A stretch of 64,000 nucleotides of DNA, from positions 3,349,213-3,413,212 of the forward strand of contig NC_068995.1 of the NCBI RefSeq assembly GCF_001194135.2. Direction: 5' to 3'. The notes beneath the pieces are model-generated. The model saw only the letters and a list, made by a program, of their open reading frames with translations, was not told the DNA's origin and did no database searches. Both the position numbers and the translations under genes were made by a program. Origin of the DNA: Octopus bimaculoides (lineage: Eukaryota). How positions within the stretch are numbered: position 1 is the first letter of the stretch; each line of letters opens with the position of its first letter. Positions 46,651-48,452 of the stretch are shown in pieces.

Positions 46651-47148
46651 CATAGACATGTGCATCACAAACACACACACATGCACAGGTAATCCTTGTC
46701 ACACCTGTCTGAAACAATATCGCTGTTGCCTAGCAACACATTTTCATCTGAGAAACTCAATCAAATTTTAATGAGTTACCAAGTCTGCTTGGCTGAACTT
46801 AAATTGGAAACAACAACAATCAATATTTTCATAAAGAAGTTTGTCCTTGCTCCTATTTCAACTGCTGAGCTGAAAAGCTATGGGTTTGTACTCTACCATT
46901 GTTTTAAAGATTTAAACTGCGTGTTTTTGCAACCATGTGGGTTTGGGTCTGGTCCCACTGCATGGAACCTTGGGCAAGTATCTTCTACTATGGCCCCAGG
47001 GTGACCATTATCTTGTGAGTAGATTTGGTAACTTGGGGAGGGGGGATGCACCCTTCCTAGCGCCAACTACTCTAAGGGTGTAGTAGGTGCCTTTTATGTG
47101 TCACCAACACCAGCCACAACTACGATTTCACTTGGTTTGACAAGTCTT

Positions 47149-47383
47149 AGAAATAATACATTTCTAAATCTCTCAGAGAGATTTATACAGTAGTATAAAG
47201 TGGTGGTATGTTATCAACTTAATGTGACAGTCCCATGAAAGGGAAGAATACTACTGTTATTTAGCCCTAGGAAGCACCGCACAGGAAATGTGTCAAGGCC
47301 GACAGGAAGCGGTGCTTCCTAGGGCTAAATAACAGTAGTATTCTTCCCTTTCATGGGACTGTCACATTAAGTTGACAACATAC
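47149..47383. repeat. 235-bp insertion with 13-bp TSD: three small hairpins plus a 75-bp inverted repeat (1 mismatch, 28-nt loop)
   Basis: tttgacaagtctt at 47136-47148 and 47384-47396; arms 47206-47280 and 47309-47383. Confidence 0.9.
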
Positions 47384-48452
47384 TTTGACAAGTCTTCTCA
47401 AGCACAGCAAATCATCAAAGGTCTCAATCACCGGTCATCGCCTCCACGAGACCCAACATTACTATAGCCTTGGAGTGACCAAAACTTTGTGAGTGGATTT
47501 GGTAGGTGGAAACTGAAAGAAGCCCATTGTGTGTGTGTGTGTGTGTGCCTTCATGTTTGTGTTAAGTACTAAGGCTGAGTCATTTGACTAAAAATTCTTC
47601 AAGGCGGTGCCCCAGCATGGCCACAGTCTAATAACTGAGACAGTTAAAAGATAAAATATAAAAGATATTTTTAGAATCAAAAGAATTGTATTTTTAAAAA
47701 ATGGCGAAAACATTGTGTATTGTAGGAATAGAAACAAATTCCTGCACATCAATTTTAACAGCAGAATCTTATGTGGACCCCAATTGAGAATCACTGATAT
47801 AGAGGTACCTTCATTGGGTTGAGGTAATTTGGTACCATTGTGCATTCTACAGACAGACAGGTACCTCATGGTATTTTCTCAGGCTGGATTTTCGGCAAAA
47901 CTTAAAAAAAAAAAACCCCCACCCCACCCCCTGATTATTTTAGAATTAAGAAACGCAAAATTATCATTTAATAGTCTCCCTACCTCCCATCATTTACCTG
48001 ATTTAAGGGCCTAGTTTAAGGAGCCACAAGGAGTGCAGACTGAATGTCTATCTCTATGTTCATCTTGGCAGTAAAACTGTCAACAGCAACCTGCACCAGC
48101 AGCAGTAGCAGCAGCAGAAGTCTGTGATCTCTCCAGGTTGCACGTTTCCAATTGCACTGCGCTGCAACATAGTGGTGGTGGTGGCAGTGACAGTGGTGGC
48201 GATGGTAGTGGTAGTGGTGGTAATGATGGTAGTGGTGGTGGTTATAGAGTAGGGTATGAGAGGGAGTTGAAAATATGGGTGGGTAGATGAGAGTAGGTGA
48301 AATGGTAGAACATGAGAGAGGGAGAGGGAGAGAGAGAGATGGAGGAAGAGAGGGAGAGAGAGAAAAAGGGAGGAAGAGAGGGAGAGAGAGATGTAAATAT
48401 GTCATACAGACAGATAAATAGATATAGATAGATAGATAGATAGGTAGGTAGG

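What the first reader, a model, noticed from the sequence alone, without database searches (positions are those of the whole stretch)
47136..47396. TSD-flanked insertion made almost entirely of stacked snap-back hairpins
Seen: a family-C repeat is interrupted (compare the uninterrupted homologue near 11780-11810) by 235 bp with a 13-bp TSD. The insert begins with three overlapping mini-palindromes (ttagaaat/atttctaa, 8 bp; taaatctct/agagattta, 9 bp; tttatac/gtataaa, 7 bp), each starting inside the previous right arm. A 75-bp inverted repeat follows, with one mismatch and a 28-nt loop; its sequence is not found elsewhere in the window. Inference: iterative fold-back synthesis, either by a Penelope-type RT (inverted 5' end) or by polymerase-theta-style templated repair. 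Near-perfect arms imply a young event. Within the SWSAP1 intron it would form a long Dicer/ADAR-type hairpin.
Basis: partly seen in the sequence, partly recalled or inferred. Interest (0 to 1): 0.7.

Follow-up and report, generated by a model that had tools for sequence, protein, structure and literature searches.

The report
Head-to-head retroposon copy in octopus
A 235-bp insertion in the Octopus bimaculoides genome is a dead, truncated copy of a short octopus repeat that landed together with an inverted partial copy of itself. This is the scar that Penelope-like or LINE reverse transcriptases are known to leave, so it is a tidy natural example of a known process rather than a new one.

Summary
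A perfect 13-bp duplication (47136-47148 / 47384-47396) flanks 235 bp. The insert has three stacked mini-hairpins, then a 75-nt inverted repeat (74/75) with a 28-nt loop. It interrupts an old SINE-like repeat whose paralogue at 11778-11817 is continuous across the site.

The interpretation needs correcting. The insert is not an orphan. An Octopus vulgaris locus holds two relatives (69% identity over 123 nt; 0/1000 shuffles). The 57-nt "mini-hairpin chain" is the conserved terminal module of that family, not debris made during this event. The left arm is family core. Only the right arm is extra.

Both outer ends of the insert are family 3' ends: a long one with the hairpin module and a short one without it. 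The variable, truncated 5' ends meet head-to-head in the middle, at small palindromes. This points to target-primed reverse transcription from both sides of a 13-nt staggered break, or to cDNA self-priming. Penelope-like elements show the same layout: an adjacent inverted 5'-truncated copy and an optional "tail" on one end.

No hammerhead ribozyme or autonomous partner was found. Copy number in the genome and read support could not be checked. The "SWSAP1 intron" claim is unsupported. Interest is low to moderate.

The parts
47136..47148 (.). Left copy of the 13-bp target-site duplication TTTGACAAGTCTT. Its last T (or TT) could equally be the terminal A(A) of the element read on the minus strand, a 1-2 nt overlap at the 3' junction.
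47149..47205 (-). Terminal 57-nt module ('tail') of the main copy, carrying the three stacked mini-hairpins. This is the canonical long 3' end of the repeat family (...GAGAGATTTAGAAATGTATTATTTCT-3' on the minus strand).
   Evidence: Aligns at 75% mean column identity with both ends of the O. vulgaris copy OvB; the 14-mer AGAGATTTAGAAAT is shared exactly; hairpin statistics
47206..47280 (-). Family core of the main, 5'-truncated copy (the left arm of the inverted repeat).
   Evidence: Contiguous homology of 47160-47275 to OvB: 85/123 identical, 0/1000 shuffles. Core 47220-47273 to OvA: 40/55; nhmmer E = 2.6e-5
47281..47308 (.). Head-to-head junction (the 28-nt loop): ACAGGAA ATGTGTCAAGGCCG ACAGGAA. 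It is bounded by a 7-nt direct repeat, contains the palindrome GGCC, and its last 5 nt extend the palindrome AGGAAGC-ggt-GCTTCCT (47304-47320). How much of it is family sequence is unresolved; similarity to O. vulgaris ATGTGACA is weak.
   Evidence: read from the sequence
47309..47383 (+). Inverted partial copy (right arm): the same 75 nt of family core in the opposite orientation. Its 3' end abuts the right TSD and lacks the 57-nt module (the short 3' end).
   Evidence: its end falls within a few alignment columns of the end of the tail-less O. vulgaris copy OvA
47384..47396 (.). Right copy of the 13-bp target-site duplication.
46952..47666 (.). Host: an older composite SINE-like repeat (modules at 46952-47030, 47043-47110, 47112-47148|47397-47410, 47460-47560, 47583-47666) that the insert interrupts.
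   Evidence: 75-90% matches to many other places in the window
11778..11817 (+). Paralogous uninterrupted site, serving as a proxy for the empty site.
   Evidence: 30/40 ungapped across the insertion point, 0/2000 shuffles

Best explanation
The 235 bp is a dead-on-arrival retroposed copy of a short, non-coding repeat family shared by Octopus bimaculoides and O. vulgaris. It was inserted by target-primed reverse transcription (TPRT) at a break with a 13-nt stagger.

The main copy reads on the minus strand. Its 3' end, the 57-nt module of three small hairpins, abuts the left TSD. It was copied for at least about 130-150 nt and is 5'-truncated.

A second partial copy of the same core (75 nt) lies in the opposite orientation. 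Its own 3' end abuts the right TSD, but it starts 57 nt further in and so lacks the hairpin module. The two truncated 5' ends meet head-to-head at a short junction rich in small palindromes.

The likeliest route (inferred) is that both 3'-OH ends of the staggered break primed cDNA synthesis on family RNA, from two alternative start sites. This has been shown in vitro for a Penelope-like element (PLE), and it is the origin of the PLE 'tail'. The close alternative is that one cDNA folded back and copied itself.

Shown: the anatomy, the TSD, the family homology, and the fixed outer versus variable inner ends. Inferred: the enzyme, the RNA intermediate and the order of steps. No function is expected. 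If transcribed, the perfect 75-bp stem would be double-stranded RNA.
For: - A 13/13 TSD flanks the insert, and the paralogue is continuous across the site.
- Homology to two O. vulgaris copies covers the hairpin module plus the left arm.
- The hairpin module is conserved at three independent ends.
- Across the five 3' ends available, the outer ends are fixed: three long and two short. The two short ends coincide within a few columns.
- The inner ends vary: about 58, 132, >=132 and about 175 nt from the long end. This is the signature of 3'-anchored, 5'-truncating retroposition.
- Two of the two well-delimited insertion units (the window insert and OvB) carry an inverted partial copy at the 5' end. 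OvA lies inverted upstream of OvB, next to (TA)n.
- Published PLE features match:
  - an adjacent inverted 5'-truncated copy, an optional tail at one end, a (TA)n target bias, and Naiad PLEs without hammerheads, present in Octopus (PMC8557442);
  - a PLE protein that cleaves and extends both strands and starts at two internal sites, with the tail being the sequence between them (PMC11167929);
  - palindromes at the inverted junction and a tail on one of two inverted repeats (PMC3846280).
- cDNA snap-back before 5' junction formation is documented for R2 in human cells (PMC11371274).
Against: - Only three family copies, from two loci, could be examined, and homology to the octopus relatives is only about 69%.
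- No hammerhead ribozyme, tRNA head, RT or GIY-YIG ORF was found in or near any copy.
- The 'tail' here is 57 nt, against 30-40 nt in described PLEs. The TSD is 13 bp, against 8-10 bp in the rotifer examples read.
- No pseudo-LTR or tandem arrangement was seen.
- The O. vulgaris copy OvB could also be read as a MITE with 55-nt terminal inverted repeats.
- Genome-wide copy number, the autonomous partner and read support could not be checked.
- The 7-nt direct repeat bounding the loop is not explained by any simple path.
Confidence: 0.6

Rival explanations
1. Single-cDNA snap-back by a LINE-type (or any) reverse transcriptase. The top-strand cDNA copied about 150 nt of family RNA, folded back, copied 75 nt of itself, and was then joined to the downstream end. 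This is a sub-variant of the best explanation that needs no Penelope-like enzyme. Its 0.3 is a share of the 0.6 given to the best explanation, not an addition to it.
For: The arms are near-identical and adjacent with a short loop. Snap-back 5' junctions are documented for R2-mediated insertion (PMC11371274, PMC11331408). L1 work describes cDNA self-annealing hairpins (PMC11702581). Small palindromes at the fold (AGGAAGC/GCTTCCT, TGTC/GACA) could nucleate it.
Against: It does not explain why the copy stops exactly where another family copy (OvA) also ends. The 3' end of the presumed cDNA has no complementarity to the point where copying would have to start. Two of two family units carry inverted 5' copies, which suggests a property of the mobilising enzyme rather than an accident.
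Confidence: 0.3
2. The whole 235-bp structure is the consensus of a multi-copy O. bimaculoides subfamily. The hairpin was inherited from a master copy, not made at this site.
For: The element belongs to a repeat family. The genome beyond this 64-kb window could not be searched. A young copy of a master with perfect arms would look the same.
Against: There is no second copy in 64 kb. The O. vulgaris relatives lack this fold-back. A 5'-truncated, 5'-inverted copy has lost whatever lies upstream and is an unlikely master. No predicted protein in 5.8 billion clusters shares words with its translation, so no abundant ORF-calling copies were seen (weak evidence).
Confidence: 0.15
3. A DNA transposon (MITE or Foldback type) with terminal inverted repeats, inserted aberrantly or rearranged.
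For: OvB has 55-nt terminal inverted repeats (36 nt at 83%, 38 nt at 74%) and folds as a panhandle, z = -7.4.
Against: The window copy has only one such end, yet has a perfect TSD flush with both ends. From general knowledge, a 13-bp TSD matches no eukaryotic DNA-transposon superfamily. OvA lacks both ends. The inner boundaries of the repeats vary between copies, as in 5' truncation.
Confidence: 0.07
4. Double-strand-break repair with captured filler DNA and polymerase-theta-type templated synthesis.
For: The junctions have 0-2 nt of microhomology, and small palindromes are present.
Against: No part of the 57-nt module is templated from 500 bp of either flank, and the module is a conserved family end. 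Break repair usually deletes sequence rather than duplicating 13 bp. Both outer ends are element 3' ends.
Confidence: 0.04
5. Assembly artefact of a short-read, gap-rich assembly.
For: The window has 13 N-runs totalling 3,862 N. The literature warns that tandem and inverted PLE structures are often mis-assembled from short reads (PMC8557442).
Against: An artefact would not create a perfect 13-bp duplication of the target flush with two element ends. The site is more than 1 kb from any gap.
Confidence: 0.06

Closest known systems
Penelope-like element (PLE) insertions with an adjacent inverted 5'-truncated copy and an optional 'tail' (Evgen'ev & Arkhipova; PMC8557442, PMC3846280, PMC11167929)
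   Same: Head-to-head inverted partial copy at the 5' end; both outer ends are element 3' ends; an extension is present on only one of the two; palindromes at the inverted junction; a short variable TSD; relatives sit next to (TA)n; no hammerhead, as in Naiads.
   Different: No PLE RT/GIY-YIG ORF, pseudo-LTR or hammerhead is linked to this family. The tail is 57 nt rather than 30-40 nt and consists of three hairpins. The element is about 230 nt and non-coding. The TSD of 13 bp is longer than the 8-10 bp examples read.
cDNA 'snap-back' 5' junctions in R2-mediated insertion (PRINT; PMC11371274, PMC11331408)
   Same: Antisense element sequence lies between the RNA-templated cDNA end and the upstream target; the insertion is 5'-truncated.
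   Different: Those are engineered, site-specific rDNA insertions. Here the inverted copy ends at a position that another family copy also uses as its 3' end.
L1 5'-inverted insertions by twin priming (Ostertag & Kazazian 2001, from own knowledge; PMC11702581)
   Same: 12-18 bp TSDs; an inverted 5' segment primed from the second target strand; junctions resolved with little or no homology.
   Different: In twin priming the inverted segment comes from RNA upstream of the direct segment, with at most about 10 bp of overlap. Here it lies entirely inside the region also present in direct orientation. There is no poly(A) and no TTTT/AA target.
MITEs and Foldback elements
   Same: Short, non-coding and hairpin-forming; the O. 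vulgaris copy has terminal inverted repeats.
   Different: The window copy has one canonical end only; the TSD is 13 bp; the inner repeat boundaries vary.

Membership tests
Penelope-like element (non-autonomous derivative) | Mobilised by a PLE reverse transcriptase with GIY-YIG endonuclease; shares its 3' end with an autonomous PLE | not testable with these tools
   No eukaryotic genome or repeat library was searchable. No RT or GIY-YIG ORF was found next to any copy. The window ORFs tested gave no Pfam hit.
Penelope-like element (non-autonomous derivative) | Adjacent inverted 5'-truncated copy at the 5' end (head-to-head) | tested here: met
   The window insert has arms 47206-47280 and 47309-47383, with both 3' ends at the TSDs. 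OvB carries an inverted 55-58 nt terminal fragment at its 5' end.
Penelope-like element (non-autonomous derivative) | Optional short extension ('tail') on one end, reflecting two RT start sites | tested here: inconclusive
   There are three long ends and two short ends differing by the 57-nt module. However, n = 5, and the tail is longer than the published 30-40 bp.
Penelope-like element (non-autonomous derivative) | Hammerhead ribozyme in the terminal repeat (canonical clades) | tested here: not met
   There is no hammerhead match in the window or in the O. vulgaris copies, even at E <= 10. The Naiad and Chlamys clades also lack it, so this does not exclude PLE mobilisation.
Penelope-like element (non-autonomous derivative) | Pseudo-LTR or partial tandem arrangement | tested here: not met
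   There is no direct tandem of the family in the window insert or in L004.
LINE-mobilised SINE / L1-type twin priming | tRNA-, 7SL- or 5S-derived head with pol III boxes; poly(A) or LINE-derived tail | tested here: not met
   ARAGORN and Rfam find nothing. There is no poly(A). OvB ends in (AAT)n, which may be a tail or a grown microsatellite.
LINE-mobilised SINE / L1-type twin priming | Inverted segment derived from RNA upstream of the direct segment, with small overlap | tested here: not met
   The inverted 75 nt duplicates positions 58-132 of the direct copy completely.
MITE (DNA transposon derivative) | Terminal inverted repeats at both ends and a fixed-length TSD | tested here: not met
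   The window copy has one canonical end, and its inverted repeat is internal on the left and terminal on the right. No TSD is discernible around OvB.
Polymerase-theta templated insertion | Insert templated from sequence near the break, microhomology at the junctions, usually with deletion | tested here: not met
   There is no match of 8 nt or more between the 57-nt module and 500 bp of either flank. A 13-bp duplication is present instead of a deletion.

The most novel reading that the evidence does not exclude
The family is an undescribed non-autonomous partner of a Penelope-like element that was active recently in O. bimaculoides. Its 57-nt 'tail' of three stacked hairpins lies between two reverse-transcription start sites. 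This single insertion then preserves, base for base, both products of dual-strand priming at one staggered break. That would be a natural counterpart of what has so far been seen only in vitro for an anole PLE.
Probability: 0.3. Interest if true: 0.5.

Novelty: new member of a known kind. Interest (0 to 1): 0.3.

Why it matters
Taken alone it is one neutral insertion, and it matters little. It has two modest values.

First, it is a clean young specimen (13/13 TSD, 74/75 arms). Both 3' junctions, both truncated 5' ends and the head-to-head joint can be read directly. The joint has small palindromes and a possible GGCC overlap. This bears on how inverted copies and 'tails' arise in Penelope-like retrotransposition, which the literature still calls unresolved.

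Second, it flags an apparently unclassified short repeat family in Octopus, with a conserved triple-hairpin end. A genome-wide survey could settle whether that family is PLE-, LINE- or transposase-driven.

It is also a caution for scanning. Stacked palindromes at an insertion edge can be inherited element sequence rather than repair scars.

Tried and rejected
1. First working model, rejected. In it the plus strand was the sense strand, the right arm plus loop was the RNA-templated part, the left arm was a snap-back copy stopping at the target duplex, and the 57 nt was filler made by iterative template switching. The 57 nt and the left arm turned out to be contiguous family sequence in O. vulgaris.

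2. The 10-nt match ACAGTAGTAT between the module and the arm (p about 0.01) was first read as a templated patch. It is better explained as an internal motif of the family: CAGTAGTA / CAGCAGTA / GCAGCAT recur in the O. vulgaris copies.

3. Donor search, all negative:
- no other copy in the window;
- no protein in the 5.8-billion-cluster database shares words with the three-frame translation (one search failed on length);
- an exact 24-mer of the arm is absent from JGI metagenomes, GTDB genomes and IMG/VR;
- no paper prints the sequence.

4. A degenerate terminal motif scanned in the three collections gave 15 hits. All are chance matches in bacterial or viral contigs, and none is recognised by the family HMM.

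5. Independent assemblies of the locus were sought through ORFs next to the site. None is on record.

6. An orthologous locus in another species was out of reach. The only gene handles are about 34 kb away, and the ENA homologue is too distant at 52%.

7. More cephalopod and mollusc DNA was sampled through LINE-ORF homologues. Only the O. vulgaris locus shares repeats with the window. About 125 kb of other ENA loci hold no family copy.

8. Rfam gave only generic long-hairpin look-alikes (MIR821, MIR2646 and others). One nominal pass, Flavi_ISFV_CRE at 44.8 vs 41 bits, is a perfect-hairpin artefact.

9. A broad local alignment to the 11.6-kb paralogue mis-threaded the site. A focused alignment resolved it.

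10. Two further points were noted but could not be fitted into any priming scheme, and are treated as coincidence. The heptamer TTGACAA is shared by the right-arm end and the TSD. The single arm mismatch (47213 A / 47376 C) lies inside it.

Full report
**Where the window comes from.** A 338-aa exon translation (12213-13226) is 100% identical to Octopus bimaculoides LOC106876651. The locus fetched for that protein matches window 1-23229 exactly. This places the window on chromosome CM046615.1 of GCA_001194135.2, with window position 1 at about 3,349,213. The window is 34.6% G+C and carries 13 N-runs, so it comes from a short-read-based assembly. About 17% of it is repeated within itself.

**The observation.**
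- TTTGACAAGTCTT occurs at 47136-47148 and 47384-47396 (13/13) and encloses 235 bp.
- The insert opens with three perfect small hairpins of 8, 10 and 7 bp. The second is 10 bp, not 9, and the first borrows TT from the TSD.
- It continues with a 75-nt inverted repeat (47206-47280 / 47309-47383) with 74/75 complementarity and a 28-nt loop.

These features exceed chance. Three such hairpins in 59 nt occurred in 2 of 200,000 dinucleotide shuffles, and the only other such clusters in the window are (TA)n tracts. The insert folds with z-scores of -25.8 as DNA and -23.3 as RNA. The 13-nt direct-repeat pair stands alone, unlike the other long direct repeats, which lie in tandem or SINE arrays.

The flanks belong to an old composite SINE-like repeat with many 75-90% relatives in the window. 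One paralogue (11778-11817) aligns ungapped across the insertion point: 30/40 identical, including GTCTTCTCAAG, 0/2000 shuffles. The site is more than 1 kb from any gap. The 'SWSAP1 intron' statement could not be supported. No coding exon or Walker-A motif was found near 47 kb. The two annotated genes seen end before 13.3 kb and do not resemble SWSAP1.

**The turn in the analysis.** At first I read the 57 nt of mini-hairpins as filler made at insertion and the right arm as the RNA-templated part. I then sampled more cephalopod DNA through homologues of a LINE ORF in the window. One locus proved related: L004, on O. vulgaris chromosome OX597815.1. It holds two relatives.
- OvB (about 11959-12190) is roughly 232 bp with 55-nt terminal inverted repeats, followed by (AAT)n(GAT)n.
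- OvA (11653-11773) lies in the opposite orientation. It is core only, 84% identical to the OvB core, and is next to (TA)n(GA)n.

The window insert, read on its minus strand, aligns to OvB over 47275-47160 with 85/123 identities (0/1000 shuffles; nhmmer E = 2.6e-5). This homology runs without a break from the left arm into the 57-nt module.

The module is conserved at three independent ends: the window copy and both ends of OvB. Mean column identity is 75%, and the shared terminus is ...GAGAG.TTTAGAAATG(A)TAATATTTCTA. The first two hairpins are conserved in position. The third is a palindrome around CAGTA/TACTG whose register shifts between copies.

So the mini-hairpin chain is inherited element sequence, not a scar of this event. 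The left arm is family core, and only the right arm is extra. The 10-nt identity between module and arm (p about 0.01) is likewise a recurring family motif.

**Anatomy in family terms.** Five 3' ends can be compared.
- Three are 'long' and end in the hairpin module: the window main copy at 47149, the OvB main copy, and the OvB inverted fragment.
- Two are 'short' and stop about 57 nt earlier, within a few alignment columns of each other: the window's inverted copy, which ends at 47383 directly against the right TSD, and OvA, which ends against (TC)n.

The inner ends vary: about 58 nt (OvB inverted fragment), 132 nt (window inverted copy), at least 132 nt (window main copy) and about 175 nt (OvB main copy) from the long end. 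Fixed outer ends with variable inner ends are the mark of 3'-anchored, 5'-truncating retroposition.

In the window insert both 3' ends touch the TSD copies. The two 5' ends meet head-to-head at a 28-nt junction that contains:
- GGCC;
- a TGTC/GACA mini-stem;
- the palindrome AGGAAGC-ggt-GCTTCCT;
- a 7-nt direct repeat (ACAGGAA) at its two edges, which remains unexplained.

**Mechanism.** A 13-bp TSD fits no eukaryotic DNA-transposon superfamily that I know of. It lies within the range of TPRT; L1 gives 12-18 bp. The literature read here describes this layout for Penelope-like elements.
- Insertions are strongly 5'-truncated. [quoted passage not shown]
- Naiad PLEs lack hammerheads, prefer (TA)n targets and occur in Octopus, where the paper describes them as long-inactivated remnants (PMC8557442).
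- Rotifer PLEs show a tail on one of two inverted repeats, palindromes at the inverted junction and 8-10 bp TSDs (PMC3846280).
- A purified anole PLE protein cleaves and extends both DNA strands. It starts reverse transcription at two internal sites, and the tail is the sequence between them (PMC11167929).

Applied here, both 3'-OH ends of a 13-nt staggered break primed cDNA on family RNA. One started at the distal site (giving the long end), the other at the proximal site (giving the short end). The two cDNA 3' ends were then joined, possibly through the self-complementary GGCC. These steps are inferred.

The close alternative is self-priming of a single cDNA. This has been shown for R2 in human cells (PMC11371274, PMC11331408) and discussed for L1. 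It explains the arms equally well. It does not explain why the inverted copy stops at the same point as OvA's end.

Classical L1 twin priming does not fit. There the inverted segment should come from upstream RNA with at most about 10 bp of overlap, but here the overlap is total.

**What argues for caution.**
- Only three copies from two loci were available, and homology is about 69%.
- No hammerhead, tRNA head, RT or GIY-YIG ORF is associated with any copy.
- The tail is longer than described for PLEs.
- OvB alone could pass for a MITE; it folds as a panhandle with z = -7.4.
- No TSD can be read around the O. vulgaris copies because of the microsatellites.
- I could not search the octopus genome, so copy number is unknown, and so is whether the fold-back is inherited from a master copy.
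- No other copy turned up in the window, in about 125 kb of other mollusc loci, in three public collections, in the protein database or in the literature.
- Read support cannot be checked, and the PLE literature itself warns that such structures trouble short-read assemblies.

**Age and consequence.** Identical TSDs and one transition in 75 arm positions indicate a recent event relative to the host repeat, which is 75-90% similar to its relatives. The copy has lost its 5' part and should be inert. If it lies in a transcript, the 75-bp perfect stem would form double-stranded RNA, but no evidence for transcription was obtainable.

**Verdict.** This is a real, young insertion whose architecture is that of a head-to-head (5'-inverted) retroposed copy of a short Octopus repeat. 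It is best matched by Penelope-like insertion products. The Penelope-type inverted 5' end is plausible. Iterative fold-back as the origin of the mini-hairpins, polymerase theta, the orphan status and the SWSAP1 context are not supported. It is a new member of a known kind, of low to moderate interest.

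Noticed in passing
L004:11600-12350 (O. vulgaris OX597815.1, about 37.09 Mb): Two copies of the same short repeat lie in inverted orientation 183 bp apart, embedded in (TA)n, (GA)n and (AAT)n(GAT)n tracts. OvB carries an inverted 55-58 nt fragment of its own 3' end at its 5' end. This may be one complex insertion or several.
   Followed up: partly
window 47213 / 47376 and 47372-47378 vs 47385-47391: The only mismatch between the arms lies inside a heptamer (TTGACAA in the right arm, TTGATAA equivalent in the left) that also occurs in the TSD 6 nt downstream. 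No priming scheme I tried uses this homology, so it may be coincidence.
   Followed up: partly
window 47281-47308: The loop is bounded by a 7-nt direct repeat (ACAGGAA ... ACAGGAA) that abuts the two arms. It is unexplained by simple snap-back or by end joining.
   Followed up: partly
window 47232-47339: Rfam model Flavi_ISFV_CRE scores 44.8 bits against a gathering score of 41, and plant miRNA models reach E = 1e-13 to 1e-16. All are generic responses to a perfect long hairpin, not homology.
   Followed up: yes
window 7165-7686 (+): A LINE-type C-terminal ORF has relatives in O. vulgaris, TARA ocean metagenomes and large ENA 'metagenome' contigs. One relative is labelled as a Pseudomonadota MAG protein (P0010, Pfam zf-RVT) and is probably animal DNA binned as bacterial.
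   Followed up: partly
window 40930-41207 (-): A relic ORF with a mariner/Tc1-like DDE-region motif (..HQVNAPAHES..). It gave no Pfam hit at E <= 0.01.
   Followed up: partly
window 52431-52596 / 53819-53984: A 166-nt inverted repeat, 84% complementary, with 1,222 nt between the arms. It could be a DNA transposon with long terminal repeats or two opposed SINE copies.
   Followed up: no
window 57148-57264 / 57611-57727 and 38770-39402: Further inverted pairs of SINE-like repeats (84-86% complementary) with 250-410 nt spacers. Whether they are independent insertions or old head-to-head events was not examined.
   Followed up: no
L001:243-970 (upstream of the window; gene reaching window about 5200): The first exon of a 280-aa annotated gene encodes ..PPDELDNYLSSFFMVVRKADGSEYEPKTLRAIMASIERYLR... 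From memory this resembles the N-terminal region of Crypton-derived / ZMYM-QRICH-type proteins. It is not SWSAP1-like.
   Followed up: no
window 55393-55575, 30603-30870, 45610-45847: Short tandem duplications with periods of about 78, 165 and 161 bp, visible as collinear direct repeats of 13 nt or more.
   Followed up: no
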